A stretch of 64,000 nt of DNA from Octopus sinensis. Its lineage: Eukaryota. The position numbers and the translations under genes are program-made. This document shows, in pieces, positions 499-60,435 of this stretch. Numbering within the stretch: the first letter of the stretch is position 1; every line of letters starts with the position of its first letter. The DNA is taken from contig NC_043002.1 of NCBI RefSeq assembly GCF_006345805.1, positions 109,306,001-109,370,000 on the forward strand, read 5' to 3'. The notes below the pieces were generated by a model. The model was not told the DNA's origin. It saw nothing but the letters and a program-made list of their open reading frames with translations, and made no database searches.

Positions 499-1527
499 AT
501 GTCTGAGGAAGTGAGCAAACATTACGAATGCAGTATTTGTGGCAAACTACTTAGTACAACACGTAATTTAGCTATTCACAGGCGCACCCATACTGGAGAA
601 AAGCCATACAGCTGTGAAGTATGCAAGAAAGCATTCTCTGTTAAAACTTATTTAACAGAACACAAACGTACACATACAGGGGAAAAGCCATTTCACTGTG
701 AAATATGTGGAAAATCATTTTCTAGTAAAGGTTACATAAAGATACACAAACGTACTCACACAGGAGAGAAACCATTTCATTGTGAAATCTGTGGCAAAGC
801 ATTTTCGCTGTTTTGTAGTGTAAGAATTCATCAGCTTATTCACACTGGAGAAAAACAATTCCATTGTGAAATCTGTGGCAAAACATTTTCTCAAGTTGGT
901 AATTTATCAAGACATAAGCGTACTCACACTGGGGAGGAAACATACAAGTGTGATGACTGTGGGAAAGCTTTTTCTACTGCAAGTGCCTGTGAAATACACA
1001 GAGGTGTGCACTCAAAACCTTACCACTGTGAAATCTGTGATAAAGCATTTTCTATAAAATACTCTTTAACAATACACAAACGTCTTCATACTGGAGAGAA
1101 GCCATATCCTTGTGACATATGTGGGAAAGGGTTTACAAACAGAGGTACCTTAATGAGGCATAAACATAGTCACACAGGAGAAAAACGACACCACTGTGAA
1201 ATCTGTGGGAAAGCATTTCCTCAAAAATATGGACTAACATTACACAAACGTATTCACACAGGAGAGAAACCATATCGGTGTGAAATTTGTGGAAAAGACT
1301 TTTCTGATAGTAGCAGCTTAAAAAGTCACAAACGTATTCATACTGGAGAAAAACCGTACTCCTGTGAAATCTGTGGGAAGGCATTTTCTGTAAATGGTAG
1401 TTTAAAAAGACACAGACGTACTCACACAGGAGAGAGACCATATCACTGTTTAATATGTGGACAAAAGTTTTCACTTAAGACCAGCTTAACAATACATAAC
1501 CGTATTCATACAGGAGAAAAGCCATAA
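499..1527 (+). CDS. C2H2 zinc-finger protein, paralog 1 (12 fingers, 342 aa)
   Basis: Intact ORF of CxxC-x12-HxxxH repeats with TGEKP linkers. Splice acceptor tttctttcag|gacatat at 370/371. Its promoter would lie upstream of the window. Confidence 0.93.
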   Translation: MSEEVSKHYECSICGKLLSTTRNLAIHRRTHTGEKPYSCEVCKKAFSVKTYLTEHKRTHTGEKPFHCEICGKSFSSKGYIKIHKRTHTGEKPFHCEICGKAFSLFCSVRIHQLIHTGEKQFHCEICGKTFSQVGNLSRHKRTHTGEETYKCDDCGKAFSTASACEIHRGVHSKPYHCEICDKAFSIKYSLTIHKRLHTGEKPYPCDICGKGFTNRGTLMRHKHSHTGEKRHHCEICGKAFPQKYGLTLHKRIHTGEKPYRCEICGKDFSDSSSLKSHKRIHTGEKPYSCEICGKAFSVNGSLKRHRRTHTGERPYHCLICGQKFSLKTSLTIHNRIHTGEKP

Positions 1528-1847
1528 ATAATGTGAGATATGTGGGAAAGCATTTCTGAAAAATCTGTCCTATTATTTCATAAATGCACTCATCCTGGTT
1601 AAAAACCATATCACTGTGAAGTTTGTGGGAAGAAATTTTCATGTAGTGGCAGGTTAAAAAAACATACACACACTGGCAATCTGCAAAATCTGTGGCAAAA
1701 CATTTCCTAAATTGAGGTGTTTAATAAGACACAAGCGTACTCATACTGGGGTAAAACTGTGTTAATTATGGGAAATCATTTACTCGCAGTGATTATGTAT
1801 GTATTCATAAATGTATTGGTAATGATGGAGATAAACCTTACTACTGA
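1528..1847 (+). pseudogene. Degenerate 4-finger tail downstream of the paralog 1 stop
   Basis: Aligns to the last four fingers of paralog 9 (EKSVLL, SGSL, NLRCLIR, RSDYIS, then DGDKPYH) but has frameshifts and stops. Confidence 0.85.
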
Positions 1848-8058: not shown

Positions 8059-8587
8059 TGCTGCCAAATAAGACAATAACACTCTCACCCACCACAAACG
8101 GGGGAAAGCATTTCTTTTAGAAATGTTTACTTAGGGGAGAATGCATTATACACTCTATAAGGTGGTTGGCATTAGGAAGGGCATCTTGCTGTAGAAACCA
8201 TGCCAAAACAGACAATGGAGCCTGGTGGGGCCTTGCTGGTTCCTATCAGCATCGAAAATGGACATTAAATAATAATGATTAGGACTTAGGTAACATTCTA
8301 TTACACCTGAACAGAGACAACATAAATAAAAGTGGAGAGTTGCTAATTTGTGATTGTGAGATATTATTGAGAAGAGTCAATCACATACACAAATAGCTAC
8401 TCATTTCACAACTTTTTGGTCATTAGTATCTAATATTTATTTTCTTTTTCTTTCAGGACATATTTCCAATGGAAAGAAGATTTTCTGCAGAGGATACTGA
8501 GAGTCTGCTGTGTTAGGGTAGAAAGATTTATCAACCAATTTATGTCTTCAGAATGAAAGGATAAGACTGTAAAAATTAACTGAGAGA

Positions 8588-9619
8588 ATGTTTCAGAAAG
8601 TGAGCAAATGTTACAAATGTGATATTTGTGGCAAAGATCTGACTACAAAATCTAATTTAGCTATTCATAGGCGCACTCATACTGGGGGGAAGTCATACAA
8701 CTGTGACGTATGTGAGAAAACATTCTCTCAAAAAGGAAATTTAAGAGAACACAAACGTACACATACAGGAGAGAAGCCATTTCACTGTGAAATATGTGGA
8801 AAATCATTTTCTTATAAAGATAATATAAAGATTCACAAACGTACACACACTGGAGAGAAGCCATTTCACTGTGAAATCTGTGGAAAATCATTTTCCACTA
8901 AAGGTTATATAAAAACACATAAACGTACACACACAGGAGAGAAACCATACAACTGTGAAATCTGTGGCAAAGCATTTTCAGACTGTAGTAGTGCAAGACT
9001 TCATCAGCTTATTCACACTGGAGAAAAACGATACCATTGTGAAATTTGTGGCAAAACATTTTCTCAAGTTGGTAATTTAACAAGACATGAACGTACTCAT
9101 ACTGGGGAGAAGCCATACAAGTGTGATGATTGTGGGAAAGCTTTTTCTAATGCAGGTGCCTGTGAAATACACAGAGGTGTTCATTCGAAGCCTTTCCACT
9201 GTGAAATCTGTGATAAAGCATTTTCTGTTAAAAAGTCTTTAACAGTTCACAAACGTATTCACACTGGAGAGAAGCCATATCATTGTGAAGTATGTGGGAA
9301 AGGATTTACAAACAGAGAAACCTTAATGAGGCATAAACGTGGTCACACAGGAGAGAAACCATATCACTGTGAAGATTGTGGAAAAGATTTTCCTGATATC
9401 AGCAGCTTAGGAAATCACAAACGTGTACATACTGGAGAAAAACCATACTCCTGTGAAATCTGTGGCAAAGCATTTTCTCAAAATGGTAGTTTAAAAACCC
9501 ACAGACGTATTCACACAGGAGAGACACCATATCACTGTTTAATATGTGGAAAAAAATTTTCATTTCAGACCAGCTTAATGATACATAACCGTATTCATAC
9601 TGGAGAAAAGCCACACTAA
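8588..9619 (+). CDS. C2H2 zinc-finger protein, paralog 2 (12 fingers, 343 aa)
   Basis: Intact ORF; acceptor at 8456/8457. Finger class 3 is duplicated and class 9 is missing. Confidence 0.93.
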   Translation: MFQKVSKCYKCDICGKDLTTKSNLAIHRRTHTGGKSYNCDVCEKTFSQKGNLREHKRTHTGEKPFHCEICGKSFSYKDNIKIHKRTHTGEKPFHCEICGKSFSTKGYIKTHKRTHTGEKPYNCEICGKAFSDCSSARLHQLIHTGEKRYHCEICGKTFSQVGNLTRHERTHTGEKPYKCDDCGKAFSNAGACEIHRGVHSKPFHCEICDKAFSVKKSLTVHKRIHTGEKPYHCEVCGKGFTNRETLMRHKRGHTGEKPYHCEDCGKDFPDISSLGNHKRVHTGEKPYSCEICGKAFSQNGSLKTHRRIHTGETPYHCLICGKKFSFQTSLMIHNRIHTGEKPH

Positions 9620-9939
9620 TGAGAAATAAATGGGAAAATATTTTCTGAAATATCTGTCCTATTAGTTTATAAACGCACTCATACTGGGTAAAAACCATAT
9701 CAGTGTGAAGTTTGTGGGAAGAAATTTTCCAATAGTGGCAGCTTAAAAAAGCATACATACACACACTAGAAATCTGTGGCAAAGCATTTTCTAACTTGAG
9801 TTGTTTAATAAGGCATAATCGTACCCATACTGGGAAAAAACCATACAGCTGTGTTATTTGTGGGAAATCATTTAATCGCAGTGATTATATATCTACACAT
9901 AAATGTACTTTTAATGATGAAGATAAATCTTACCACTGA
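9620..9939 (+). pseudogene. Degenerate finger tail of paralog 2
   Basis: cac TAA TGA, then decayed fingers with further stops. Confidence 0.85.
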
Positions 9940-9944
9940 CTTTT

Positions 9945-10441
9945 ATAATAATAATAATAATAATTGTGTACAGTGCTCAGGTGCACTGCAACTCATCTAA
10001 AGTGTATATATAATCAGGTGTAGTTTCAGCGGATTTCGGAAAGCATGAGGGCCTTAAAGAATGCAGTGTCATGGCAGTCAACAACTGACGCAGGCAGTTT
10101 ATTCCATGCTTCAGCAACTCTGAGCGTGAAAAAATGTTTCCGAAAGTCATGGGAGCTGTGTTGTTTTCTGACTTTGTAGGCATGTCCATGTGTGTTAGAC
10201 ACATAGAGATCAAAAAGGTGTTCAGTGTTGTTGTTGGTGAGGTGGTTGATAACTTTGCGGGTGTTTACCAAGTCCGTCGCCAGACGCCGGAGCTTCAGTG
10301 AATCCATGCCCAGGGAAACAAGGTGCTCAGAATATGGTAGGTGTCTGATGGAGGGTATGCGTTTGGTTGCACGTCTCTGGACAGATTCCAGGAGGTCAAT
10401 GTTCTGAGCAAGATAGGGATTCCAAACTGATGATGCGAATA
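9945..10441 (-). mobile_element. CR1-type LINE 3' fragment
   Basis: ORF 10026-10463 reads SSVWNPYLAQNIDLLESVQRRATKRI...RKHFFTLRVAEAWNKLP. (TTA)n tail near 9945-9963. Confidence 0.88.
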
Positions 10442-10639
10442 AGATAGTATAGTATAAAACCATATTGTTGTGATATTTGTATTAAAGAATTTATGTATAT
10501 GAATGTTATTAAATTACTATAATTGTTTATAACATGTTTAGTGTATTCTTTGGATGTTGTAAATTTTTCATTTTTAATGTTACTTGTTAGGTCACATGTA
10601 TCATATGATATGGTTAGAGTGAGAAAACATGTTACTACT

Positions 10640-15599: not shown

Positions 15600-16255
15600 G
15601 ATGCAGTAGTAATCAACCAATGCTGGGCGTTCCTTCGTTTTAACTCTACAAAACTATAACAAGACCTCGGTTGTTTCCGTGACAACTCGAAAGCATTGTC
15701 AATTATTGCTACCAAATAACACAATAACACTCTCACCCACTACAAATGGGGTGAAAGTATTTTTTTAGAAATGTTTACATGGAGAAGTCATTACACACTC
15801 TGTAAAGTGGTTGGCATTAGGAAGGGTATCCATCTGTAGAAACCATACAGAAACAGTCGATGGAGCCTGGTGGGGACTTTTCTGGTTCCTGTCAAATTGT
15901 CCAACCCTTGCCAGCATCGAAAATGGACATTAAATAATAATGATGAGGATTTTGGGAATATTCTATTAATCCTGAACAGAGACAGCTTAAATAAAAGTTG
16001 TGACTTGCTGATCTATAATTGAGGTATTGTTCAGAATAGTTAATCATATATACCACACAAATAGCCACCCATTTCACAACCTTTTGGTCATTAGTATCTA
16101 ATATTTATTTTCTTTTTCTTTCAGGACATATTTTCATTGGAAAGAAGATTTTCTGCAGAGGATACTGAGAGTCTGCTCTGTTAGGGTAGAAAGATTTATC
16201 AACCAATTTATGTCTTCAGAATGAAAGAAAAAACCTGTAAAAATTAACCGAGAGA

Positions 16256-17284
16256 ATGTTTCAGAAAGTGAGCAAACGTTACAAATGTGATATTTGTGGT
16301 AAATTACTTACTACAAAATGTAATTTAGCTATTCATAGGCGCACTCATACAGGGGAAAAGCCATACCACTGTGAAGTATGTGAGAAAACATTCACTCAGA
16401 AAGCAAATTTAATAGAACACAACCGTACACATACAGGAGAGAAACCATTTCACTGTGAAATATGTGGAAAATCATTTTCTAATCAAGGTTATATAAAGAA
16501 ACACAAACGTACACACACAGGGGAAAAACCATTTCACTGTGAAATCTGTGGCAAAGCATTTTCACAGTTCAATAGCGTAAGAAGTCATCGGCTTATTCAC
16601 ACTGGAGAAAAACAATACCATTGTGAAATTTGTGGCAAAACATTTTCTCAAGTTAATAATTTAACAAGACACAAACGTACTCACACTGGAGAGGAGCCAT
16701 ACAGGTGTGATGACTGTGGGAAAGCTTTTTCTAATGTGAGTAACTTTGAAAGACACAGAGGTGTGCATTCAAAACCTTACCACTGTGAAATTTGTGGTAA
16801 AACATTTTCTGTAAAAGAGTCTTTAACAGTACACAAACGAGTTCACACTGGAGAGAAGCCATATGCTTGTGAAGTATGTGGGAAAGGTTTTACAATTAGT
16901 CGTACCTTAATAAGGCATAAACGTGTTCACACAGGGGAAAAACAACACCACTGTGAAATCTGTGGGAAAGCTTTTCCTGAAAAATATGTCTTAACATTAC
17001 ACAAACGTATTCACACAGGAGAGAAACCATATCACTGTGAAGTTTGTGGAAAAGACTTTTCTGGTAGGTGCAGTCTAAGAAATCACAATCATATTCATAC
17101 TGGAGAAAAACCACATCACTGTGAAATCTGTGGCAAAGCATTTTCTGTAAATGGTAGTTTAAGAAGACACAAACGCATTCACACAGGAGAGACACCATAT
17201 CATTGTTTAATTTGTGGAAAAGAATTTTCACTTAAAACCAGTTTAACAAGACATAGACGTATTCATACTGGGGAAAAGCCATAA
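16256..17284 (+). CDS. C2H2 zinc-finger protein, paralog 3 (12 fingers, 342 aa)
   Basis: Intact ORF; acceptor at 16124/16125. Confidence 0.93.
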   Translation: MFQKVSKRYKCDICGKLLTTKCNLAIHRRTHTGEKPYHCEVCEKTFTQKANLIEHNRTHTGEKPFHCEICGKSFSNQGYIKKHKRTHTGEKPFHCEICGKAFSQFNSVRSHRLIHTGEKQYHCEICGKTFSQVNNLTRHKRTHTGEEPYRCDDCGKAFSNVSNFERHRGVHSKPYHCEICGKTFSVKESLTVHKRVHTGEKPYACEVCGKGFTISRTLIRHKRVHTGEKQHHCEICGKAFPEKYVLTLHKRIHTGEKPYHCEVCGKDFSGRCSLRNHNHIHTGEKPHHCEICGKAFSVNGSLRRHKRIHTGETPYHCLICGKEFSLKTSLTRHRRIHTGEKP

Positions 17285-26722: not shown

Positions 26723-27754
26723 ATGTTTCAGAAAGTGAGCAAACGTTACAAATGTGGCATTTGTGGTAAAGTACTTACTACAAAGTGTAATTTAGCTATT
26801 CATAAGCGCACTCATACTGGGGAAAAGCCATACCACTGTGAAGTATGTGAGAAGGCATTCTCTGTAAAAGCTTATTTAACAGAACACAAACGTACACATA
26901 CAGGAGAGAAACCGTTTCACTGTGAAATATGTGGAAAATCATTTTCCACTAAAGGTTATATAAAAACACACAAACGTACTCACACTGGAGAGAAACCATA
27001 CAACTGTGAAATCTGTGGCAAAGCATTTTCACAGTTTAATAATATAAGAATTCATCAGCTTATTCACACTGGAGAAAAACAATACCATTGTGAAATTTGT
27101 GGCAAAAGATTTTCTCAACTTGGTGATTTATCAAGACATAAACGTACTCACACTGGGGAGAAGCCATACAGGTGTGATGACTGTGGGAAAGCATTTTCTA
27201 ATGTGAGTAACTTTGAAAGACACAGAGGTGTGCACTCAAAACCTTACCACTGTGAAATTTGTGGTAAAATATTTTCTGTGAAAGAGTCTTTAACAGTACA
27301 CAAACGAGTTCACACTGGAGAGAAGCCATATGCTTGTGACATATGTGGGAAAGGATTTCCAGGGAATATTACCTTAAGAAGGCATAAACGTGTTCACACA
27401 GGGAAAAACGGACATCACTGTGAAATCTGTGGGAAGGCATTTCATGAAAAATATCTCTTAACATCACACAATCGTATTCACACAGGAGAGAAACCATATC
27501 ACTGTGAAGTTTGTGGAAAAGACTTTTCTGAGAGGTGCAGCTTAAAGAAACACAATCGTGTTCATACTGGGGAGAAGCCACATCAGTGTGAAATCTGTGG
27601 CAACGCATTTTCTGAAACTGGTAGCTTAAAAAGTCACAGACGTATTCACACAGGAGAGAAACCATATCACTGTCTAATATGTGGAAAAGAATTTTCGCAT
27701 AAGAGCAGCTTAACAACTCATATCCATTTTCATACTGGAGAAAAACCACACTAA
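26723..27754 (+). CDS. C2H2 zinc-finger protein, paralog 4 (12 fingers, 343 aa)
   Basis: Intact ORF; acceptor at 26591/26592. Confidence 0.93.
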   Translation: MFQKVSKRYKCGICGKVLTTKCNLAIHKRTHTGEKPYHCEVCEKAFSVKAYLTEHKRTHTGEKPFHCEICGKSFSTKGYIKTHKRTHTGEKPYNCEICGKAFSQFNNIRIHQLIHTGEKQYHCEICGKRFSQLGDLSRHKRTHTGEKPYRCDDCGKAFSNVSNFERHRGVHSKPYHCEICGKIFSVKESLTVHKRVHTGEKPYACDICGKGFPGNITLRRHKRVHTGKNGHHCEICGKAFHEKYLLTSHNRIHTGEKPYHCEVCGKDFSERCSLKKHNRVHTGEKPHQCEICGNAFSETGSLKSHRRIHTGEKPYHCLICGKEFSHKSSLTTHIHFHTGEKPH

Positions 27755-33237: not shown

Positions 33238-33299
33238 GTAAGATAACGTTTATTTATCCATTGAGCAAGCTTTCAGTATCTGGTGATGAAAGAAGTAAA

Positions 33300-33620: not shown

Positions 33621-35851
33621 TGTTGTGTCCTGTGTCGATATAAAAAAGGCTGGCGATCTTAAACTATGGTACTCATACCGTAATTTAGACAAAAGACTTT
33701 CCGTTAAGGGTCAACGCTATTAACTAACCTCTCCTCTGTAAATTACTGTTATTCATGTTTGTCGGAGCAAATTTTTTTCTCTCGCAAAATATACTTTCTG
33801 TAGAAGACAGTAAAAAACCTGAAAATTGGCTATAATAATGTTGCATTCTATTCACATTGCTGTGAAGGTAAGCTGGTATGGAGGGAAAAAAAGTCGGAGA
33901 AAGCAGTTACAGGTTTATAAATGTAAGAAACTAGGTATTTTTAGCTAATAATAAGACGGAATTTTTCTGCGTTTAGTGGTGTCAACTTTAAGGATGTACC
34001 CTGTGAAATGTGGCGTCTGTACTGTTCCTTGTAGGTTTGTATGCTTGGGTTTGTTAACTATAAGAATAACACTGGTCAGCAAAGAACTTGTCCCAAGGGA
34101 ATGAATACCTGTATCTTATAAGTTGTGATTCGCTGATCTATGATTATGAGATATTTATTGATGATAATAGCGCCTGACACTGAGAAGGGTACTTATTCTG
34201 TGACAGAGGCATCAGCCACGACTATGTTTATATTTATATATATATGTGTGTGTGTGTGTGTCTTTTATATTATCTCTTCTCTATCACTTGACAACCAGTG
34301 TTGGTTTGTTTATGTCACCATAACTTACACTCCCACTAAAGAGATCCAAGAAGATAAATACTAGATTAAAAAAAACAGTACTGGTGTTGAGTTGAACCTA
34401 ACCTGTCAAGGCAGTACCCCAGCATGGCCACATTCCACTGACTGAAAGAAGAAAAACATTAATGGATTCGGTTCTATTTCAACTAAAACAAACAATAATT
34501 GTTACTTTATTTGCATGACACTCTTCTGAGATTCTTAGACACATATGAATAGTTAAGGACAAAAATATTTGTCTCGTTGGAAGGATTTAGGGTAATGTTT
34601 GAAACTTTGCTGATAATAATTATGCAAAACAGTAATACTGAATGGAAATAATCCAGTGACCATGGGCCCATGACAGTACCTCCAACAGAGTATTACTTAA
34701 ACACTGTCCCAAATAGCAGAAATGTTGTTTTTTTTCGTAATTCTTCAGCATCAAGTATATCTATATCTATAACAATGATTTTACATATGTCATGTTTTCT
34801 TCTGATCTCTCTTCCATCTAAAGACTGAGGAATAAAACAGATATCCTGTTAGAGAAGTTTGCGTTTTATCTGTTCTCAAAATAACAAGAATTATTGATTT
34901 CAGATTTTGGCACAAGGCCAGTAGTTTGAGGGCAGGGGCCAGTGGATTTACATGAATGCAAGTATTCAACTGGTACTCAATTCATTGACCGAAAAGAATG
35001 AAAGGCAAAGTTAACCGTGTCAGAATGTGAATATAGATATGTCACTAAGCATTAAGCCAGGTACGCCCAGGAATCAGCTAGCTCGGTGTCTGAAATAGCC
35101 AAAAACATTGAAAGGTGATAATGGAAAGAATTCTACATAGTTGTTATGAAGCTCCTTCTGACCATGTTAAATGATATCCTCTATTTATCTAATTCTACCT
35201 AGTTTCAATCTGTGAACGATTGGTCAGTTTGTTTAATCACAGATGTATTCAAACAGGTGATAGAAGCATACTCTGAAATATGTGGGAAAACATTGTTAAT
35301 TATTGCTGTCAAATAAGACAATAACACTCTCACCTACCACAAATGGGGGAAAGCATTTTTTGTAGAAATGTTTACTTCGGGGAGAATGCATTATACACTC
35401 TGTAAAGTGGTGAGCATTAGGAAGGGCATCCAGCTGTAGAAACCATGCCAAAACAGACAATGGAGCCTGGTGGGGCCTTGCTGCTTCCTGTCAAACTGTC
35501 CGACTCTTGCCAGGACCAAAAACAGATATTAGATAATAATGATAAGGACTTAGGGAATATTCTATTGATCCTGAACAGAGACAACATGAAGAAAGGTTGT
35601 GACTTGCTGATCTATGATTGAGATATTGTTGAGAATATAAGTCAATCACTTACCACACAAATAGCAACTCATTTCACAACTTTTTAGTCATTAGTATCTA
35701 ATATTTATTTTATTTTTCTTTCAGGACATATTTCCATTTGAAAGAAGATTTTCTGCAGAGGATACTGCCAATCTGCTGTGTTAGGGTAGAGAGATTTATC
35801 AACCAATGTTTTCAGAATGAGAAAATAAAATTGCAAAATTTAACTGAGAGA

Positions 35852-36883
35852 ATGTTTCAGAAAGTGAGCAAACGTTACAAATGTGGTATTTGTGGTAAAT
35901 TACTTACTACAAAGTCTAATTTAGCTATTCATAGGCGCTCTCATACTGGAGAAAAGCCATACCACTGTGAAGAATGTGAGAAAGCATTTTCTACAAAAGC
36001 TTATTTAACAGAACACAAACGTACACATACAGGAGAGAAACCATTTCACTGTGAAATATGTGGAAAATCATTTTCTTATAAAGGTTACATAAAGATACAC
36101 AAACGTACTCACACTGGAGAGAAACCATTTCACTGTGAAATCTGTGGAAAATCATTTTCAGATTGTAGTAGTACAAAAAGTCATCAACTTACTCACACTG
36201 GAGAAAAACAATTCCATTGTGAAATATGTGGCAAATCATTTACTAAAGTAAATAATCTAACAAGACATAAACGTATTCATACTGGGGAGGAACCATATAA
36301 GTGTGATGATTGTGGGAAAGCATTTTCTAATGTGAGTAACTTTGAAAGACACAGAGGTGTGCATTCAAAACCTTACCACTGTGAAATTTGTGGTAAAACA
36401 TTTTCTGTAAAAGAGTCTTTAACAGTCCACAAACGAGTTCACACTGGAGAGAAGCCATGTTGTTGTGAAGTATGTGGGAAAGGGTTTACGAGTAGTCGTA
36501 CTTTAATAAGGCATAGACGTACTCATACAGGGGAAAAACGACACCGCTGTGAAATCTGTGGGAAAGCATTTCCTGAAAAATATGTCTTAACATTACACAA
36601 ACGAATTCACACAGGAGAGAAACCATATCACTGTGAAGTTTGTGGAAAAGACTTTTCTGATAGCAGCAGCTTAGTAAGTCACAAACGTATTCATACTGGA
36701 GAAAAACCACATCACTGTGAAATCTGTGGCAAAGCATTTTCAGCAAGTAGTAGTTTAATGAGACACAGACGTATTCATACAGGAGAGAAACCATATCACT
36801 GTTTAATATGTGGAAAAAAATTTTCACACAAGACCAGCTTAAAAACTCATATCCATATTCATAGTGGAGAAAAGCCACTGTAG
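35852..36883 (+). CDS. C2H2 zinc-finger protein, paralog 5 (12 fingers, 343 aa from the ATG)
   Basis: ATG at 35852 aligns with the paralog starts. The frame is open back to the acceptor at 35724/35725; the ORF track start at 35738 is a TTG. Confidence 0.92.
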   Translation: MFQKVSKRYKCGICGKLLTTKSNLAIHRRSHTGEKPYHCEECEKAFSTKAYLTEHKRTHTGEKPFHCEICGKSFSYKGYIKIHKRTHTGEKPFHCEICGKSFSDCSSTKSHQLTHTGEKQFHCEICGKSFTKVNNLTRHKRIHTGEEPYKCDDCGKAFSNVSNFERHRGVHSKPYHCEICGKTFSVKESLTVHKRVHTGEKPCCCEVCGKGFTSSRTLIRHRRTHTGEKRHRCEICGKAFPEKYVLTLHKRIHTGEKPYHCEVCGKDFSDSSSLVSHKRIHTGEKPHHCEICGKAFSASSSLMRHRRIHTGEKPYHCLICGKKFSHKTSLKTHIHIHSGEKPL

Positions 36884-40309: not shown

Positions 40310-41341
40310 ATGTTTCAGAAAGTGAGCAAACATTGCAAATGTGGTATTTGTGGTAAAGTACTTCCTACAAAATGCCATTTAGCTATTCATAGGCGCACTC
40401 ATACTGGGGAAAAGCCATACAACTGTGAAGTATGTAAGAAAGCATTCTCGCAAAAAGGAAATTTAATAGAACACAAACGTACACATACTGGGGAAAAGCC
40501 ATTTCACTGTGAAATATGTGGAAAATCATTTTCTTATAAAGGTTACATGAATACACACAAACGTACTCACACAGGAGAGAAACCATATCACTGTGAAATC
40601 TGTGGCAAAACATTTTCAGGATGTAGTAGTGCAAAAAGTCATCAACTTGTTCACACTGGAGAAAAACGATACGATTGTGAAATTTGTGGCAAAACATTTT
40701 CTCAAGTTGGTAATTTAACAAGGCATAAACATACTCACACTGGAGAGGAACCATACAGGTGTGATGATTGTGGGAAAGCATTTTCTAATGTGAGTAACTT
40801 TGAAAGACACAGAGGTGTTCATTTGAAGCCTTTCCACTGTGAAATTTGTAGTAAAACATTTTCTGTAAAAGAGTCTTTAACAGTACACAAACGAGTTCAC
40901 ACTGGAGAGAAGCCATATCACTGTGACATATGTGGGAAAGGGTTTACAAGTAGCGGTACCTTAATAAGGCATAAACGTTCTCACACAGGGGAAAAACAAC
41001 ACCACTGTGAAATCTGTGGGAGAGCATTTCCTGAAAAATATGTTTTAACATTACACAAACGAATTCACACAGGAGAGAAACCATATCACTGTGAAGTTTG
41101 TGGAAAAGACTTTACTGGTAAGTGCAATTTAGTAAATCACAAACGTATTCATACTGGAGATAAACCACATCACTGTGACGTCTGTGGCAAAGCATTTTCT
41201 CAGAATGGTAGTTTAATAAGACACAGACGTATTCATACAGGAGAGAAACCATATCACTGTTTAATATGTGGAAAAGAATTTTCACTTAAGACCAGCTTAA
41301 AAACTCATACCCATATTCATAGTGGAAAAAAGCCACTGTAA
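40310..41341 (+). CDS. C2H2 zinc-finger protein, paralog 6 (12 fingers, 343 aa); no own first exon found
   Basis: Intact ORF and acceptor at 40180/40181. No CACGTGAC or first-exon block was seen between 36.9 and 40.2 kb. Confidence 0.88.
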   Translation: MFQKVSKHCKCGICGKVLPTKCHLAIHRRTHTGEKPYNCEVCKKAFSQKGNLIEHKRTHTGEKPFHCEICGKSFSYKGYMNTHKRTHTGEKPYHCEICGKTFSGCSSAKSHQLVHTGEKRYDCEICGKTFSQVGNLTRHKHTHTGEEPYRCDDCGKAFSNVSNFERHRGVHLKPFHCEICSKTFSVKESLTVHKRVHTGEKPYHCDICGKGFTSSGTLIRHKRSHTGEKQHHCEICGRAFPEKYVLTLHKRIHTGEKPYHCEVCGKDFTGKCNLVNHKRIHTGDKPHHCDVCGKAFSQNGSLIRHRRIHTGEKPYHCLICGKEFSLKTSLKTHTHIHSGKKPL

Positions 41342-41650: not shown

Positions 41651-41664
41651 TGATGGAGAAATTT

Positions 41665-44098: not shown

Positions 44099-44189
44099 GT
44101 AAGATAACGTTTATTTATCCATTGAGCAAGCTTTCAGTATCTGGTGATTAAAGAAGTAAATACAAATTAAACGGGAGATAATTAAGTTC

Positions 44190-47093: not shown

Positions 47094-48293
47094 ATGTTTC
47101 ACAAAGTCAGCAAATGTTACAAATGTGGTATTTGTGGTAAAGTACTTACTACAAAATATAATTTAGCTATTCATAAGCGCATTCATATTGGGGAGAAGTT
47201 ATACCACTGTGAAGTATGTGAGAAGGCATTTTCTGTAAAAGCTTATTTAACAGAACACAAACATATACATACAGGAGAGAAACCGTTTCACTGCGAAATA
47301 TGTGGAAAATCATTTTCTCATAAAGGTTACGTAAAGATACACAAACGTGTTCACACTGGAGAGAAACCATACAATTGCGAAATCTGTGGCAAAGCATTTT
47401 CAGATCTTAGTAGTGCAAAAAGTCATCAACTTATTCATACTGGAGAAAAACCATTTCACTGTGAAATATGTGGAAAATCATTTTCTTATAAAGGTTACTT
47501 AAAGATTCACAAACGTACACACACAGGAGAGAAACCATTTCATTGTGAAATCTGTGGTAAAGCATTTTCACAGTTCAATGGCGTAAGAAGTCATCAGCTT
47601 ATTCACACTGGAGAAAAACGATACCATTGTGAAACCTGTGGCAAACCGTTTTCTCGACTTGGTAATTTAAAAACGCATAAACATACTCATACTGGGGAGA
47701 AGCCATACAGGTGTGATGATTGTGGGAAAGGTTTTTCAACTGCAAGTGCCTGTGAAATACACAGAGGTGTGCACTCAAAACCTTACCACTGTGAAATCTG
47801 TGATAAAGCATTTTCTGTAAAATACTCTTTAACAATACACAAACGTCTTCACACTGGAGAGAAGCCATATCACTGTGAAGTATGTGGGAAAGGATTTACA
47901 AACAGAGGTACCTTAATGAAGCATAAACATAGTCACACAGGAGAAAAACAACACCACTGTGAAATCTGTGGGAAAGCGTTTCCTCAAAAATATTGTCTAA
48001 TATTACACAAACGGATTCACACAGGAGAGAAACCATATCACTGTGAGGTTTGTGGAAAAGACTTTGCTGGTAAGTGCAACTTAGTAAATCACAAACGTAT
48101 TCATACTGGGGAAAAACCACATCACTGTGAAGTCTGTGGCAGAGCATTTTCGCAAACTGGTAGTTTAAAACGACACAGACGTACTCACACAGGAGAGAAA
48201 CCATATCACTGTTTAATATGTGGGAAAGAATTTTCACTTAAGACCAGCTTAACAACACATAACCGTATTCATACTAGACAAAAGTCACTGTAA
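47094..48293 (+). CDS. C2H2 zinc-finger protein, paralog 7 (14 fingers, 399 aa)
   Basis: Intact ORF; acceptor at 46964/46965. The finger 3-4 pair is present twice. Confidence 0.93.
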   Translation: MFHKVSKCYKCGICGKVLTTKYNLAIHKRIHIGEKLYHCEVCEKAFSVKAYLTEHKHIHTGEKPFHCEICGKSFSHKGYVKIHKRVHTGEKPYNCEICGKAFSDLSSAKSHQLIHTGEKPFHCEICGKSFSYKGYLKIHKRTHTGEKPFHCEICGKAFSQFNGVRSHQLIHTGEKRYHCETCGKPFSRLGNLKTHKHTHTGEKPYRCDDCGKGFSTASACEIHRGVHSKPYHCEICDKAFSVKYSLTIHKRLHTGEKPYHCEVCGKGFTNRGTLMKHKHSHTGEKQHHCEICGKAFPQKYCLILHKRIHTGEKPYHCEVCGKDFAGKCNLVNHKRIHTGEKPHHCEVCGRAFSQTGSLKRHRRTHTGEKPYHCLICGKEFSLKTSLTTHNRIHTRQKSL

Positions 48294-48470
48294 TATGAAA
48301 TTTGTGGGAAAGCATTTTCAGAAAAATTTGTCCTATTGGTACATAAACTTACTCATACTGGAGAAAAACCATATCATTGAAGTTTGTGACAAGGAATTTT
48401 CCAATAGTGGCAGCTTAAAAGGACATATACACACTGGGGAAAAACCACACCACTGTGAAATCTGTGATGG
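48294..48470 (+). pseudogene. Truncated degenerate finger tail of paralog 7
   Basis: ctg TAA, then about 2.5 decayed fingers, cut off by a retroposon fragment. Confidence 0.8.
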
Positions 48471-50036: not shown

Positions 50037-51065
50037 ATGTTTCAGAAAGTGAGCAAACGTTACAAATGTGATATTTGTGGCAAAGATCTTACTACAAAAT
50101 CTAATTTAGCTATTCATCGGTGCACTCATACTGGGGAAAAGCCATACCACTGTGAAGTATGTAAGAAAGCATTCTCTGTAAAAGCTTATTTAACAGAACA
50201 CAAACGTACACATACCGGAGAGAAACCATTTCACTGTGAAATATGTGGAAAATCATTTTCTAGTAAAGGTTACGTAAAGGTACACAAACGTACACACACA
50301 GGAGAGAAACCATATCACTGTGAAATCTGTGGCAAAGCATTTTCAGAGTTCAGTAGTGCAAGAAGTCATCAACTTATTCACACAGGAGAAAAACGATACC
50401 GTTGTGAAATATGTGGCAAATCATTTTATCAAGTTAATAATTTAACAAGACATAAACGTATTCACACTGGGGAGGAACCATACAAGTGTGATGATTGTGG
50501 GAAAGCATTTTCTAATGTAACTAACTTTGAAACACACAAAGGTGTTCATTCGAAGCCTTTCCACTGTGAAATCTGTGATAAAGCATTTTCTGTAAAATAC
50601 TCTTTAACAGTACACAAACGTATTCACAGTGGAGAGAAGCCATATCATTGTGAAGTATGTGGGAAAGGATTTACTGGGTGTGGTACCTTAATAAGGCATA
50701 AACGTACTCACACAGGGGAAAAACGCCACCGCTGTGAAATCTGTGGGAAAGCTTTTCCTGAAAAATATGTTTTAACATTACACAAACGAATTCACACTGG
50801 AGAGAAACCATATCACTGTGAAGTTTGCGGAAAAGACTTTGCTGGTAGGTGCAACTTAGTAAATCACAAACGTATTCATACTGGGGAAAAACCACATCAC
50901 TGTGAAGTCTGTGGCAAAGCATTTTCTCAAATTGGTACTTTAGTAAGACACAGACGTATTCACACAGGAGAGAAACCATATCACTGTTTAATATGTGGAA
51001 AAGAATTTTCACTTAAGACCAGCTTAACAACACATAACCGTATTCATACAGGAGAAAAGCCATAA
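50037..51065 (+). CDS. C2H2 zinc-finger protein, paralog 8 (12 fingers, 342 aa); no own first exon found
   Basis: Intact ORF and acceptor at 49905/49906. Only distal intron sequence lies between it and paralog 7. Confidence 0.88.
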   Translation: MFQKVSKRYKCDICGKDLTTKSNLAIHRCTHTGEKPYHCEVCKKAFSVKAYLTEHKRTHTGEKPFHCEICGKSFSSKGYVKVHKRTHTGEKPYHCEICGKAFSEFSSARSHQLIHTGEKRYRCEICGKSFYQVNNLTRHKRIHTGEEPYKCDDCGKAFSNVTNFETHKGVHSKPFHCEICDKAFSVKYSLTVHKRIHSGEKPYHCEVCGKGFTGCGTLIRHKRTHTGEKRHRCEICGKAFPEKYVLTLHKRIHTGEKPYHCEVCGKDFAGRCNLVNHKRIHTGEKPHHCEVCGKAFSQIGTLVRHRRIHTGEKPYHCLICGKEFSLKTSLTTHNRIHTGEKP

Positions 51066-51408
51066 CTAATGTGAAATCTGTGGGAAAGCATTTTCTGAAA
51101 AATCTGTCCTATTAGTTCATAAACTTACACATACTGGAGAAAAACCATATCACTGTGAAATTTGTGACAAGGAATTTTCCAATAGTGGCAGCTTTAAAGG
51201 ACATATACATACACACACTGGAGAGAAGCCTCACCACTGTGAAATATGTGGCAAAATATTTTCTAACTTGAGGTGTTTAATAAGACACAAGCGTTTTCAT
51301 ACTGGGGAAAAACCATACAGCTGTGTTATTTGTGGGAAATCATTTACTCGTATTGATTATATATCTACTCATATGTACCGTTAATAATGGAGATAAACTT
51401 TACCACTG
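51066..51408 (+). pseudogene. Out-of-frame but nearly intact 4-finger tail of paralog 8
   Basis: cca TAA c TAA tgt, then [21 protein letters not shown]...[17 protein letters not shown], open in the shifted frame. Confidence 0.85.
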
Positions 51409-51604
51409 ACTTTCGTAGGAAAGCATATTATCAGACCATATTGTGATATTTGAATTGAATCTATCTATATGAATGTTATTAAAGTGCTATAAATGTTTAT
51501 AACCTGTTTTGTGTATTTTTTGGAAATTGTAGTAAATTTTTCTTTGTAATGTTACTTGTCACGTTGCATGTATCATACAATATAGTTAGAGTGAGAAAAC
51601 TTAT

Positions 51605-56382: not shown

Positions 56383-58725
56383 TAATGGTTACATTTGAAT
56401 GACAGCACAGAAAACTTGTCAGACATCGGTCATCATGTGCAACAGCTGACAAACAGAAAATGTAACAAATCAGCCCATTCAGTCGGGTCCCAGGGCCCGT
56501 TCTGTTTACACTACCTCAAAGTGCTCTCTCATACAGCGCTCAGCCAGTTGAGGGTTTTCGGGAAAAGTGTAGTTTACAGTAACTAATCTACCTGCTATGG
56601 CAGATTAGAAGCATGATCTGGGACCTTCTGTGATTGGCCAGTTTGTGTTTGTCAGATCAATCACAATAAACCTTACAATTATCGGTTATTTTTAAACATT
56701 TACAGACAGAATTCTTGAAAAGGCTCGAGTGATCATCAATATCAAGCAACTGTAACCCCCCCCCTCGTGGCTCCAAAGGACAAATAAAAGATATAAAGCT
56801 GGTTTTAGCTAAAAGTGGTAGCATGTGCCAAGTCCCACAACAAGTGCGTGCCAGTTGCGTTACACCAGCATCCACTATGACTACAATTTCACTGGACTTG
56901 ATGGGTCTTCTTCTCAAACACAACATATTGCCAAGTCTCTTGACCATTTGCCATTGCTTTTTACATACCACTGGTACGGGTGCCAGTTATGCAACACCGG
57001 CATCGGCTGCATTGTCTCTGTGAGGCCCACTGCTCATCAGGTGCTTTTTACATGGCACTGGCATTGGCCACATTGCCTCCGTTATGCCCAGCGCTCAGTT
57101 GGTGCTTTTTGTGTGCCACCTGCACAGATACCAGATGGTTGACACAGGCTTCGACCACATTTCCTCCATGGAGCCCATCGCTCGGAAGATGCTTTTTATG
57201 TGCCAATTATGTGACACGCATCATCCATGACTACGATTATCCTCATCGTTTAACGTCTGCTTTCCATGCCAGCATGGGCTGGATGGCTTGACCGAGAATT
57301 GAGTTGAACCAAACCTTTCAAGGCAGTACCCCAGCATGGCCACATTCCACTGATGGAAAGAAGAAAAAGATTAATGGAATTGGTTCCATTTCAACTAAAA
57401 CAAACAATAACTGTTACTTTATTTGCATGACATTTTTCTGAGATTCTTAGACATATGAATAGTTAAGGACAAAAATATTTGTCTTGTTGGAGGGATGTAG
57501 TGTAATGTTTGAAACTTTGCTGAGTATAATTATGTGAAACATTAATACTGAGTGGAAATAATCCAGTGACCATGGGCCTATGACAGTACCTCCAACAGAG
57601 TATTACTTAAACACCGTCCCAAATAGCAGGAATGGTTTTCTGGTAATTCTTAAGTATCAAGTATATCTATAACAATGATTTGATTCTTTACATCTGTCAT
57701 GTTTTCTTCTCATCTCTCTTTCATCTAGAGACTGAGGAAGGAAACAGATTTTGTCCTGAAGAAGATTTGTGCTTTTTCTGTTCTCAAACAAACAAATAGT
57801 GTTGATTTTAGCATTTTGGCACAAGGCCAGTAGTTTGAGGGGAGAGGCCAGTGGATTTACATCAGTGCAAGTATTCAACTGGTACTTATTTCATTGATCG
57901 AAAAGAATGAAAGGCAAAGTTGCCCTTGTCAGAATGTGAAGATGGGTGAAATGCCACTAAGCCTTTAGCCAGGCACACTCATGATTCATTGAAAGGAGGT
58001 AATGGAAAGAATTCTGCATATTTCTTATGAAGCTACTTCTGACCTCATGAAATGAGAACATCTATTTATCTAATTCTGCCTAGTTTCAATCTGTGAACAC
58101 TTGGTCAGTTTGTTTAATCACACACATATTCAAACAGGTGATAGAAGCATACTCTGAAATATGTGGGAAAACATTGTTAATTATTGCTGTCAAATAAGAC
58201 AATAGCACTCTCACCCACCACAAAGGAGGGAAAGCATTTTTTTAGAAATGTTTACTGACGGGAGATTGCGTTATACACTCTGTAAAGTGGTGAGCATTAG
58301 GAAGGGCATCCAGCTGTAGAAACCATGCCAACTGACAATGGAACCTGGTGGGACTTTGCTGGTTCCTGTCAAACTGTCCGACTCTTGCCAGGACCAAAAA
58401 CAGATATTAGATAATAATGATAAGGACTTAGGGAATATTCTATTGATCCTGAACAGAGACAACATGAAGAAAGGTTGTGACTTGCTGATCTATGATTGAG
58501 ATATTGTTGAGAATATAGTCAATCACTTACCACACAAATAGCAACTCATTTCACAACTTTTTAGTCATTAGTATCTAATATTTATTTTATTTTTCTTTCA
58601 GGACATATTTCCATTTGAAAGATTTTCTGCAGAGGATACTGCCAATCTGCTGTGTTTGGGTAGAGAGATTTATTAACCAATGTTTTCAGAATGAGAAAAT
58701 AAAATTGCAAAATTTAACTGAGAGA

Positions 58726-60435
58726 ATGTATCAGAAAGGGAGCAAACCTTACAAATGTGATATTTGTGGCAAAGATCTTACTACAAAATCTAATTTAGCT
58801 ATTCATAGGCGCACTCATACAGGGGAAAAGCCATACCGCTGTGAAGTATGTGAGAGGGCATTCTCTGTAAAAGGAAATTTAAGAGAACACAAACGTACAC
58901 ATACAGGAGAGAAACCATTTCACTGTGAAATATGTGGAAAATCATTTTCTGATAAAGGTTACATAAAGATTCACAAACGTACACACACTGGAGAGAAACC
59001 ATACCACTGTGAAATCTGTGGCAAAGCATTTTCACAGTTTCATAATGTGAGAAGTCATCAACTTATTCACACTGGAGAAAAGCGATTCAATTGTGAAATC
59101 TGTGGCAAGCCATTTTCTCGACTTGGTAATTTAAAAAGGCATAAACGTACCCATACTGGGGAGAAGCCATACAGGTGTGATGATTGTGGGAAAGCTTTTT
59201 CTAATTTGAGTGAATGTGAAACACACAGAGGTGTACACTCAAAACCTTACCACTGTGAAATCTGTGATAAAGCATTTTCTGTAAAAGTGTCTTTAACAAT
59301 ACACAAACGTGTTCACACTGGAGAGAAACCATATCATTGTGAAGTATGTGGGAAAGGATTTACAAGTAGTGGTACCTTAATAAGGCATAAACGTACTCAC
59401 ACAGGGGAAAAACGACACCACTGTGAAATCTGTGGGAAATCATTTACTGAAAAATTTATTTTAACATTACACAAACGAATTCACACAGGAGAGAAACCAT
59501 ATCACTGTGAGGTTTGCGGAAAAGACTTTTCTGATAGGTGCAGCTTAAAGAAACACAATCGTATTCATACTGGAGAAAAACCACATCACTGTGAAATCTG
59601 TGGCAAAGCATTTTCTCAAAATGGGACTTTAAAAAGACACAGACGTATTCACACAGGAGAGAAACCATATCGCTGTTTAATATGTGGAAAAAAATTTTCA
59701 CTGAAGCCAAACTTAACAGCTCATACCCGTCTTCATACTGGGGAAAAGCCACACTACTGTGAAATCTGTGGAAAAGCATTTTCTGAAAAATCTGTCCTAT
59801 TAGTTCATAAACGCACTCATACTGGAGAAAAACCATATCAGTGTGAGGTTTGTGGGAAGAAATTTGCCAATACTGGCAGCTTGAATGTACATAAACGTAC
59901 ACACACTGGAGAGAAATCACACCACTGTGAAATCTGTGGCAAAACATTTTCTGTAAATGATCAGTTAAAAAGACACAGACGTATTCACACAGGAGAGAAA
60001 CCATATCGCTGTTTAATATGTGGAAAAAAATTTTCACTTCAGCCCAACTTAACAGTTCATACCCGTCGTCATACCGGGGAAAAGCCACACTACTGTGAAA
60101 TCTGTGGCAAAGCATTTTCTGAAAAATCTGTCCTATTAGTTCATAAACGCACTCATACTGGAGAAAAACCATATCAGTGTGAAGTTTGTGGGAAGAAATT
60201 TTCCAGTCATGGCAACTTTAACGGACATAAACGTACACACACTGGAGAGAAACCTCACCACTGTGAAATCTGTGGCAAAGCATTTTCTAACTTGAGATGT
60301 TTAATAAGACACAAGCGTATTCATACTGGGGAAAAACCATACAGCTGTGTTATTTGTGGGAAATCATTTAATCGCAGTGATTATATATCAACTCATAAAT
60401 GTACTTTTAATGATGGAGATAAACCTTACCACTGA
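58726..60435 (+). CDS. C2H2 zinc-finger protein, paralog 9 (19 C2H2 fingers plus a terminal atypical finger, 569 aa from the ATG)
   Basis: Intact ORF; acceptor at 58601/58602. It keeps TAC where the other paralogs have a stop, and carries a 336-nt (4-finger) internal duplication. Confidence 0.93.
   Translation: MYQKGSKPYKCDICGKDLTTKSNLAIHRRTHTGEKPYRCEVCERAFSVKGNLREHKRTHTGEKPFHCEICGKSFSDKGYIKIHKRTHTGEKPYHCEICGKAFSQFHNVRSHQLIHTGEKRFNCEICGKPFSRLGNLKRHKRTHTGEKPYRCDDCGKAFSNLSECETHRGVHSKPYHCEICDKAFSVKVSLTIHKRVHTGEKPYHCEVCGKGFTSSGTLIRHKRTHTGEKRHHCEICGKSFTEKFILTLHKRIHTGEKPYHCEVCGKDFSDRCSLKKHNRIHTGEKPHHCEICGKAFSQNGTLKRHRRIHTGEKPYRCLICGKKFSLKPNLTAHTRLHTGEKPHYCEICGKAFSEKSVLLVHKRTHTGEKPYQCEVCGKKFANTGSLNVHKRTHTGEKSHHCEICGKTFSVNDQLKRHRRIHTGEKPYRCLICGKKFSLQPNLTVHTRRHTGEKPHYCEICGKAFSEKSVLLVHKRTHTGEKPYQCEVCGKKFSSHGNFNGHKRTHTGEKPHHCEICGKAFSNLRCLIRHKRIHTGEKPYSCVICGKSFNRSDYISTHKCTFNDGDKPYH

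What the first reader, a model, noticed from the sequence alone, without database searches (positions are those of the whole stretch)
499..60435. Finger-by-finger mosaicism: paralogs look assembled from interchangeable finger cassettes
Seen: recognition-helix types group paralogs differently at each finger. F6 TASACEI is in paralogs 1 and 7, NVSNFER in 3, 4, 5 and 6. F10 DSSSL is in 1 and 5, G(K/R)CNLVN in 6, 7 and 8, xRCSL in 3, 4 and 9. F5 RLGNLK is in 7 and 9. F2 VKAYLTE is in 4, 7 and 8, QKGNL in 2 and 6, and paralog 9 has the hybrid VKGNLRE. Paralog 7 matches paralog 1 over classes F6-F9 but 6 and 8 at F10. Inference: recurrent gene conversion or unequal crossover reshuffles DNA-binding modules within the cluster and generates new composite specificities, analogous to PRDM9 or KRAB-ZNF array turnover but in an invertebrate array with no visible effector domain.
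Basis: partly seen in the sequence, partly recalled or inferred. Interest (0 to 1): 0.75.

Follow-up and report, generated by a model that had tools for sequence, protein, structure and literature searches.

The report
Recombination-shuffled octopod zinc-finger gene cluster
Nine tandem zinc-finger genes, probably from an octopus-like genome, have swapped stretches of one to four DNA-reading fingers by gene conversion and unequal crossover; this is well known in vertebrate zinc-finger clusters but has not been described for cephalopods in the papers I could check.

Summary
Fingers at the same position are 80-99% identical and fingers at different positions 62-80%, so the exchange is in register between paralogs, not free cassette shuffling.

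Recombination is strongly supported.
- The PHI test is significant for all sites, for scaffold-only sites and for neutral sites.
- A breakpoint model lowers AICc by about 280-330. In 100 single-tree simulations the largest drop was 17.7.
- Segment trees reject one another in AU tests.
- Helix types at c02, c06-c09 and c10 occur in all four combinations.
- Local synonymous distances follow local amino-acid distances.
- A roughly 300-nt non-coding tract is 295/296 identical between the non-adjacent genes P5 and P9.
- Three genes carry out-of-register finger gains or losses with junctions at the linker.

The unit exchanged is 0.75-4 fingers, and c06-c09 travels as one block. No effector domain is visible. 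A retroelement fragment matches Octopus best.

Gene conversion and finger gain or loss among poly-ZF paralogs are already documented in vertebrates, so this is a new member of a known kind. Changed binding specificity is inferred, not shown.

The parts
499..1527 (+). P1, 12-finger C2H2 gene (342 aa)
8588..9619 (+). P2, 12 fingers. It has an extra c03-like finger (F03 8780-8863, F04 8864-8947) and lacks c09. The deletion junction lies near 9362, where the c08 finger carries a c09-type 'GEKP' linker.
16256..17284 (+). P3, canonical 12-finger gene, used as the reference for finger classes c01-c12
26723..27754 (+). P4, 12-finger gene
35852..36883 (+). P5, 12-finger gene. The reading frame happens to stay open upstream to 35738.
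40310..41341 (+). P6, 12-finger gene
47094..48293 (+). P7, 14 fingers and the most mosaic gene. It is P4-like in c01-c02, P9-like in c05, P1-like in c06-c09 (47706-48035) and P8/P6-like from c10 into the relic.
47286..47621 (+). P7 fingers F03-F06, two c03-c04 pairs. F04 is 'DLSSAKS' type. F06 is 'QFNGVRS' type and 94% identical to P3 c04. The F04 linker is c02-type 'GEKP'. This is an out-of-register exchange between unlike paralogs with its junction in the linker near 47440-47455.
50037..51065 (+). P8, 12-finger gene
58726..60435 (+). P9, 19 fingers plus a degenerate 20th. It is the only copy that still encodes c13-c16.
59584..60255 (+). P9 internal 336-nt (4-finger) duplication. F11-F14 match F15-F18 at 75, 78, 83 and 73 of 84 nt.
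943..1272 (+). P1 c06-c09 block, shared with P7 at 47706-48035. The two differ at 18 of 330 nt here against 108 of 696 elsewhere. pS is 0.12 here against 0.27 elsewhere.
35500..35799 (+). Recent conversion tract (or assembly collapse) just 5' of the P5 ATG. It is 295/296 identical to P9 at about 58375-58675. The flanks are 91-95% identical and the CDS 79-94%.
51063..51415 (+). Example of the pseudo-finger relic (c13-c16) that follows the stop codon in P1-P8. The others start at 1525, 9614, 17282, 27749, 36878, 41336 and 48288. All eight genes have their stop (TAA, or TAG in P5) at the codon that is TAC in P9.
16111..16255 (+). Example of the conserved 3' splice acceptor (TTTTTCTTTCAG|GACATATT) 124-131 nt upstream of each ATG, with the 5' UTR that follows it

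Best explanation
The window is a tandem cluster of nine fingers-only Krüppel-type C2H2 genes, most likely from an octopod cephalopod. The copies share a 12-finger core in which each finger position is a distinct homology class. After duplication, or during it, the copies repeatedly exchanged sequence with one another.

Two processes are involved. The first is in-register interlocus gene conversion, in tracts of roughly 60-330 nt (0.75-4 fingers). The inferred tract ends fall in the conserved linker and Cys-knuckle sequence between recognition helices. The second is occasional out-of-register unequal exchange, which adds or removes whole fingers at the linker. This produced P2 (+1 and -1 finger), P7 (+2) and P9 (+4).

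The structural residues are under purifying selection, and the DNA-contact residues are the most variable positions. Each exchange therefore moves an intact recognition helix into a new neighbourhood. As a result, every one of the nine genes carries a different combination of helix types.

What is shown: the mosaic, its presence at neutral sites, the structural rearrangements, and the selection profile. What is inferred: that the new combinations bind different DNA targets, and that this is adaptive.
For: Architecture:
- Same-class fingers are 80-99% identical and other-class fingers 62-80%.

Incongruence along the gene:
- PHI gives z = -7.8 for all sites and z = -4.0 for scaffold-only sites.
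- PHI gives z = -6.1 for the neutral set and z = -5.5 for the non-coding flanks alone.
- The signal survives the alternative finger assignments for P2 and P7, and it survives dropping P7, dropping P1 and P7, or keeping only the six canonical genes (p = 0.004).
- In the breakpoint search, AICc falls from 8385 to 8104 with 8 segments, while the same segments on one topology stay at 8356-8405. On a finer grid the best model has 9 segments, AICc 8054.
- In 100 single-tree simulations using the real site rates, the best dAICc ranged from 0 to -17.7.
- AU tests show each segment rejecting the other segments' trees.

Descent rather than convergence:
- Helix types that differ by at least 4-5 nt occur in all four combinations for c02 x c06, c02 x c08, c02 x c10, c06 x c10, c08 x c10 and c09 x c10. 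This never happens within c06-c09.
- pS and pN distance matrices correlate within a segment (r = 0.33) but not between segments (r = 0.04). The stricter version gives 0.19 against 0.004, with 31 of 720 relabelings as high.
- The relic c13-14 distance matrix tracks c10 (r = 0.65) and c11-12 (r = 0.66) but not c03-05 (r = -0.26).

Discrete tracts:
- A GENECONV-like permutation test finds P5-P9 in the 5' flank (global p = 0.012), P3-P5 in c06-07 (0.02) and P1-P8 from c12 into the relic (0.016).
- The P5-P9 tract is 295/296 identical.

Unequal exchange:
- P7 F03-F06 and the P2 junctions carry the neighbouring class's linker.
- P9 has a 336-nt internal duplication.

Selection:
- dN/dS is 0 at the zinc ligands, 0.16 in the linker, 0.45 in the other scaffold and 0.84 at contact positions -1, 2, 3 and 6.
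Against: - Strictly synonymous sites alone are too few to carry the case: 25 informative sites, PHI p = 0.10-0.13.
- Per-block Fisher tests on pS give only 3 of 144 at p<0.01, against 1.4 expected.
- In the strict pS/pN test the signal comes mainly from c01 and c06-09. For the single-finger sharings at c02, c05 and c10 the synonymous evidence is uninformative.
- AU tests on alignments of 20-80 sites are not reliable.
- Breakpoints avoid the mid-helix grid point in 8 of 8 cases, but this is not significant (0.75^8 = 0.10). Informative sites also cluster in the helices, which biases where a breakpoint can be placed.
- No reads, second haplotype or orthologous cluster could be obtained, so neither the assembly nor the timing is independently verified.
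Confidence: 0.85

Rival explanations
1. There is one gene tree and no recombination. The shared helices are ancestral states or convergent amino-acid substitutions driven by selection on DNA-contact residues.
For: Contact positions are the most variable and have the highest dN/dS, 0.84. The synonymous-only tests are weak.
Against: Incongruence persists with the helix codons removed, in the non-coding flanks and in the pseudo-finger relics. Shared helices use identical codons over 21 nt, for example TASACEI in P1 and P7 and VKAYLTE in P4, P7 and P8. Helix types at least 4-5 nt apart occur in all four combinations. Local pS follows local pN. Single-tree simulations with the real rate profile never approach the observed AICc gain.
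Confidence: 0.04
2. Assembly artefact. Mis-joined or collapsed reads across paralogs that are 85-89% identical created chimeric gene models.
For: Tandem arrays are hard to assemble. The P5-P9 5' tract is 295/296 identical, which is what a collapse or mis-join would look like. No reads were available.
Against: The other shared blocks carry their own substitutions. P1 and P7 differ at 18 of 330 nt in c06-09 with pS = 0.12. A chimeric join would instead give identical stretches. There are no Ns in the window. All nine ORFs are intact and every zinc ligand is preserved. The finger gains and losses keep the reading frame and the finger periodicity.
Confidence: 0.05
3. The mosaic arose only at the birth of each copy. 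Each new gene was a single-breakpoint hybrid made by unequal crossover between misaligned neighbours, with no later gene conversion.
For: Out-of-register exchanges clearly occur in P2, P7 and P9. The relationships in the 3' relic follow those of c10-c12, as expected for hybrids that share a 3' part.
Against: The best model needs about 8 breakpoints for nine genes. It includes short internal segments bounded on both sides, namely c02 alone, c04 alone and c10 alone. The near-identical P5-P9 tract is flanked on both sides by sequence only 79-95% identical and joins genes 23 kb apart, with three genes between them. The 5' flank relationships are uncorrelated with c01, r = -0.11. Tract ages range from pS of about 0.003 to 0.12.
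Confidence: 0.1

Closest known systems
Lineage-specific poly-zinc-finger (KRAB-ZNF and related) gene clusters of vertebrates
   Same: Both are tandem paralog clusters with a fast-evolving recognition helix on a conserved scaffold. Both show short gene-conversion tracts between paralogs, as GENECONV detected in many vertebrate gene sets and in most chicken genes. Both gain and lose whole fingers by recombination (Emerson & Thomas 2009, PMC2604467; Kauzlaric et al. 2017, PMC5363842).
   Different: No KRAB, SCAN or BTB effector is found here. The likely host is a cephalopod. Here the mosaic erases almost all shared tree signal between segments, with off-diagonal r of about 0.04.
Cephalopod and octopod C2H2 ZNF expansions
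   Same: Both are tandem clusters of multi-finger C2H2 genes in repeat-rich octopod genomes (PMC12513265, PMC9795677). The retroelement fragment in the window matches Octopus sinensis and O. vulgaris proteins best.
   Different: Neither of those two papers mentions gene conversion. PMC12513265 also does not mention recombination or positive selection. One of them dates the expansion from paralog Jukes-Cantor distances. No orthologue of these nine genes could be retrieved, so the species is not established.
PRDM9 zinc-finger minisatellite
   Same: In both, new combinations of recognition helices arise by recombination within repeated finger-coding DNA.
   Different: A PRDM9 array is a minisatellite within one gene. 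Its repeats are nearly identical apart from the contact codons, exchange is out of register, and the protein has a PR/SET domain (established knowledge, my own). Here the fingers within a gene are 62-80% identical, exchange is mainly in register between separate genes, and no SET domain is found.

Membership tests
Krüppel-type C2H2 poly-zinc-finger proteins | Tandem C-x2-C-x12-H-x3-H units joined by TGEKP-like linkers | tested here: met
   Each gene has 12-19 regular units with a 28-aa period and all zinc ligands are invariant. Pfam zf-C2H2 and zf-H2C2_2 match at E = 1e-60 to 1e-163.
KRAB-ZNF (or SCAN/BTB/ZAD-ZNF) | An N-terminal effector domain encoded upstream of the finger exon | tested here: not met
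   Pfam finds only zinc-finger-type matches and no KRAB, SCAN, BTB or ZAD domain. The ATG lies 8 codons before finger 1. There are 2-4 in-frame stops between the upstream acceptor and the ATG in 7 of 9 genes, and none in P5 and P9. Distant upstream exons were not searched exhaustively.
PRDM9-type minisatellite finger array | Near-identical finger repeats within one gene, plus a PR/SET domain | tested here: not met
   Fingers within one gene are 62-80% identical. There is no SET hit.
Interlocus (ectopic) gene conversion among tandem paralogs | Phylogenetic incongruence along the alignment that exceeds a single-tree null | tested here: met
   PHI, the breakpoint model against 100 simulations and AU tests.
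Interlocus (ectopic) gene conversion among tandem paralogs | The signal is present at neutral sites, not only at selected residues | tested here: met
   The flanks plus relics plus strictly synonymous sites give PHI z = -6.1. pS and pN are coupled within segments. Strictly synonymous sites alone are underpowered, p about 0.1.
Interlocus (ectopic) gene conversion among tandem paralogs | Discrete tracts of raised identity, bounded on both sides, between non-adjacent copies | tested here: met
   The P5-P9 tract is 295/296 identical and flanked by sequence 79-95% identical. Permutation-significant fragments were found.
Interlocus (ectopic) gene conversion among tandem paralogs | Non-reciprocal transfer observed among haplotypes or individuals | not testable with these tools
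   Only one haplotype is in hand. No reads or orthologous loci were retrievable.
Octopod lineage-specific C2H2 expansion | Located in an octopod genome, within a tandem C2H2 cluster | tested here: inconclusive
   The cluster architecture is met. The taxon is inferred only from a non-LTR retroelement fragment that is 71-79% identical to Octopus sinensis and O. vulgaris proteins. No ZNF orthologue was found.

The most novel reading that the evidence does not exclude
In octopod fingers-only ZNF clusters, ectopic conversion with tract ends in the conserved linker and knuckle may be the main, and a selectively favoured, route for making new helix combinations. It would act as an evolutionary module shuffler working alongside point mutation, perhaps tracking transposable elements. 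It would also scramble paralog divergence thoroughly enough that published datings and gene trees of the cephalopod C2H2 expansion are systematically biased.
Probability: 0.25. Interest if true: 0.55.

Novelty: new member of a known kind. Interest (0 to 1): 0.4.

Why it matters
The finding extends to a probable cephalopod, and to a ZNF family with no effector domain, the recombination-driven array turnover known from vertebrate KRAB-ZNF clusters. It supports the view that the finger-coding repeat itself, not the effector domain, is what makes these families so evolvable.

There is also a practical consequence. Gene trees and divergence-based dates for cephalopod C2H2 expansions assume tree-like paralog history. 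One example is the estimate of about 41 Ma from paralog Jukes-Cantor distances in PMC9795677. In this cluster, relationships in one segment say almost nothing about those in another, with r of about 0.04. Such trees and dates, and also dN/dS site tests, can therefore be misleading.

Finally, the natural chimeras form a ready-made series for testing how modular multi-finger DNA recognition is. P7, for example, combines P4-like, P9-like, P1-like and P8-like parts.

Tried and rejected
- Identifying the species or finding orthologues. Exact look-ups of all nine proteins found nothing.
- Two homology searches with the ZNF, one over the whole protein and one restricted to c06-c08, were swamped by generic vertebrate ZNFs at 59% identity or less.
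- A metagenome scan returned only generic ZNFs at 58% identity or less.
- Only the retroelement fragment gave a taxonomic hint, to Octopus.
- Albertin et al. 2015 is not held in the library.
- A synonymous-only PHI test and per-block Fisher tests on pS were too underpowered to decide alone. I replaced them with the pS/pN matrix-coupling test and the neutral-set PHI test.
- I considered that the ORF extensions upstream of the ATG in P5 and P9 might encode an N-terminal domain. I rejected this because the other seven genes have 2-4 in-frame stops there, and P5 and P9 share that region through the recent conversion tract.
- I considered free shuffling of fingers between positions. I rejected it on the class identities.
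- Antisense ORFs inside the genes, such as 27369-27944 and 59456-60172, were treated as by-products of the repeat and not pursued.
- Pfam scans of intergenic ORFs gave only one weak RVT_1 hit.
Full report
**What is there.** The window contains nine ORFs on the + strand, each made almost entirely of Krüppel-type C2H2 fingers. Pfam returns only zinc-finger-type matches and no KRAB, SCAN, BTB or SET domain. Six genes (P1, P3, P4, P5, P6, P8) have the same 12 fingers. In all nine genes the unit at class c06 is 26 aa instead of 28, because its linker is shortened to 'HSKP'. The duplicated unit extends about 200-900 nt upstream and 350-600 nt downstream of the ORF, at 77-90% identity. The intergenic DNA carries retroelement debris. 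One such fragment matches Octopus sinensis and O. vulgaris proteins best, at 71-79% identity. No orthologue of the ZNFs could be found, so the species is open.

**The observation.** Every helix string and every grouping in the finding is present. The groupings also hold at the nucleotide level, with identical codons across shared helices. Differences per finger between a given pair of genes vary enormously. P1 and P7 differ by 4, 2, 7 and 5 nt in c06-c09 but by 18, 16 and 15 nt in c01, c05 and c10. P4 and P7 differ by 3 nt in c02 and by 24 nt in c08.

One correction is needed. Fingers are not interchangeable between positions. Same-class fingers are 80-99% identical and other-class fingers only 62-80%. 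The mosaic is therefore between paralogs, in register.

**Is it recombination?** Several independent tests agree.

- *PHI test.* Neighbouring informative sites are more compatible than distant ones. This holds for all sites (z = -7.8) and with the helix codons removed (z = -4.0). It holds for the non-coding flanks plus pseudo-finger relics (z = -5.5) and for the whole neutral set (z = -6.1, p = 2e-4). It is robust to how the extra fingers of P2 and P7 are assigned. It also survives dropping P7, dropping P1 and P7, or keeping only the six canonical genes (p = 0.004).
- *Breakpoint model.* A GARD-like dynamic-programming search lowers AICc from 8385 to 8104 with 8 segments. The same segments forced onto one topology stay at 8356-8405. 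On a finer grid the optimum is 9 segments, AICc 8054. In 100 simulations on the single best tree, using the real per-site rates, the best improvement ranged from 0 to -17.7.
- *AU tests.* Each of six segments rejects the trees of the others, mostly at p<0.01. The same is mostly true for scaffold-only and third-position data, although those alignments are small.
- *Four-gamete test on helix types.* Types separated by at least 4-5 nt occur in all four combinations for c02, the c06-c09 block and c10. This never happens within c06-c09, which behaves as one linked block.

**Descent or convergence?** The key rival is selection-driven convergence at the helices. Strictly synonymous sites alone are too few to decide: 25 informative sites, p about 0.1. 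Block-wise Fisher tests on pS are barely above chance. Three other results argue for descent.

- The synonymous distance matrix of a segment correlates with the non-synonymous matrix of the same segment (mean r = 0.33) but not with those of other segments (r = 0.04; 41 of 20000 relabelings as high). A stricter version that counts only identical-amino-acid codons gives 0.19 against 0.004 (31 of 720 relabelings as high), driven by c01 and c06-c09.
- In the P1-P7 block, both pS (0.12 against 0.27) and the non-synonymous differences fall together.
- The distance matrix of the non-coding relic fingers follows the adjacent c10 (r = 0.65) and c11-12 (r = 0.66) but not the distant c03-05 (r = -0.26).

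Together with the identical codons, this is what local identity by descent predicts. Amino-acid convergence does not predict it.

**Discrete events.** A GENECONV-like permutation test finds globally significant fragments: P5-P9 in the 5' flank (p = 0.012), P3-P5 in c06-c07 (p = 0.02) and P1-P8 from c12 into the relic (p = 0.016). Several more are pairwise-significant.

The clearest event lies just upstream of the ATG. P5 35500-35799 is 295/296 identical to P9, while the flanks are 91-95% identical and the coding region 79-94%. The two genes lie 23 kb apart with three genes between them. This is either a very recent conversion tract or the one place where an assembly collapse should be checked.

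Out-of-register exchange is visible directly.

- P7 carries two c03-c04 pairs of different origin. F04 is 'DLSSAKS' type and F06 is 'QFNGVRS' type, 94% identical to P3. The F04 linker is the c02-type 'GEKP'.
- P2 has an extra c03-like finger, 95% identical to P4's. It lacks c09, and its c08 finger carries the c09-type linker.
- P9 has a 336-nt four-finger internal duplication, with F13 and F17 matching at 83 of 84 nt.

All junctions preserve the finger period and map to the linker.

**Size and placement of tracts.** The best model has breakpoints at c02+21, c03+0, c04+0, c04+63, c06+21, c08+0, c10+21 and c11+21. None falls at the mid-helix grid point. This fits tract ends lying in the conserved linker and Cys-knuckle, but it is not significant (0.75^8 = 0.10). 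It is also biased, because informative sites cluster in the helices. Segments span about 0.75-4 fingers, so 'finger-by-finger' is only roughly right.

**Selection and function.** The zinc ligands never change (pN = 0). dN/dS is 0.16 in the linker, 0.45 in the other scaffold, and 0.84-0.86 at the contact and other helix positions. Positions -1 and +2 are the most variable in the unit. The genes therefore look functional, with conserved folds and diversifying DNA-reading surfaces. All nine carry different combinations of helix types. That these combinations bind different targets is an inference from the established model of C2H2 recognition. It was not tested.

**Effector domain.** A strong splice acceptor (TTTTTCTTTCAG|GACATATT) lies 124-131 nt upstream of each ATG. 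Seven genes have 2-4 in-frame stops between the acceptor and the ATG. P5 and P9 have none, and they share this region through the conversion tract. The simplest reading is a 5' UTR intron and fingers-only proteins.

**Comparison with what is known.** Gene conversion among paralogous poly-ZF genes, and gain and loss of fingers by recombination, were reported for vertebrate lineage-specific expansions (PMC2604467). 'Drifting and shifting' of finger arrays was reported for mouse KZFP clusters (PMC5363842). Tandem C2H2 clusters in octopods are well known (PMC12513265, PMC9795677). Neither of those cephalopod papers mentions gene conversion, and one dates the expansion from paralog distances. The PRDM9 analogy is weak, because a PRDM9 array is a near-identical minisatellite within one gene (my own knowledge), unlike these arrays.

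**Verdict.** This is a real and statistically robust mosaic, explained by recurrent ectopic conversion plus unequal exchange. It is a known kind of process in a new host and in a family without an effector domain. The remaining uncertainties are the integrity of the assembly, the species, and the functional consequence.

Noticed in passing
1525-1880, 9614-9960, 17282-17640, 27749-28090, 36878-37200, 41336-41660, 48288-48470, 51063-51415; compare 60088-60435: Each of P1-P8 is followed, right after its stop, by relics of four more fingers (c13-c16) that are still coding in P9. All eight stops (TAA, or TAG in P5) sit at the codon that is TAC (Tyr) in P9, so the truncation looks like one shared nonsense mutation. 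P1, P3 and P8 also share a +1-nt insertion there. The relic frame is still open in P4, P6 and P8. It is broken in P1, P2, P3 and P5, and cut by an insertion in P7.
   Followed up: partly
class c06 in all nine genes, e.g. 16700-16777: The linker after c06 is two residues shorter than normal in every paralog ('HRGVHSKP-YHC' instead of 'H...HTGEKP-Y.C'). This conserved atypical linker splits the array into c01-c06 and c07-c12, yet c06-c09 is inherited as one block across it.
   Followed up: no
60256-60435: The last finger of P9 is degenerate ('[19 protein letters not shown]...NDGDKPYH*', an H-x-C ending). The same sequence is recognisable in the relics of the other genes.
   Followed up: no
35738-35851 and 58615-58725: In P5 and P9 only, the frame upstream of the ATG is open back to about the splice acceptor. 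The two genes share a 4-nt deletion, part of the converted tract, that removes the in-frame stops seen in the other seven genes. This is probably chance, but an upstream coding exon cannot be excluded for these two.
   Followed up: partly
10026-10463 (-), 24776-25678 (-), 29999-30343 (+): Non-LTR retroelement debris lies between the genes. The first fragment matches Octopus sinensis and O. vulgaris proteins at 71-79% identity, one of them named 'RNA-directed DNA polymerase from mobile element jockey-like'. The last gives a sub-threshold Pfam RVT_1 hit.
   Followed up: partly
34387-35061, 39307-39796, 48857-49309, 57299-57973: A block of about 500-680 nt, 83-88% identical between copies, recurs roughly 0.5-1.5 kb upstream of P5, P6, P8 and P9. 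It could be a shared promoter or 5' exon, or a repeat.
   Followed up: no
32992-33577 vs 43854-44454: This intergenic pair is 95.7% identical over 600 nt, far closer than the genes themselves. It is either a young repeat insertion or another recent conversion or duplication.
   Followed up: no
27369-27944 (-), 59456-60172 (-) and similar: Long antisense ORFs lie inside the finger arrays. They are most likely a by-product of the periodic, codon-biased repeat rather than genes.
   Followed up: no
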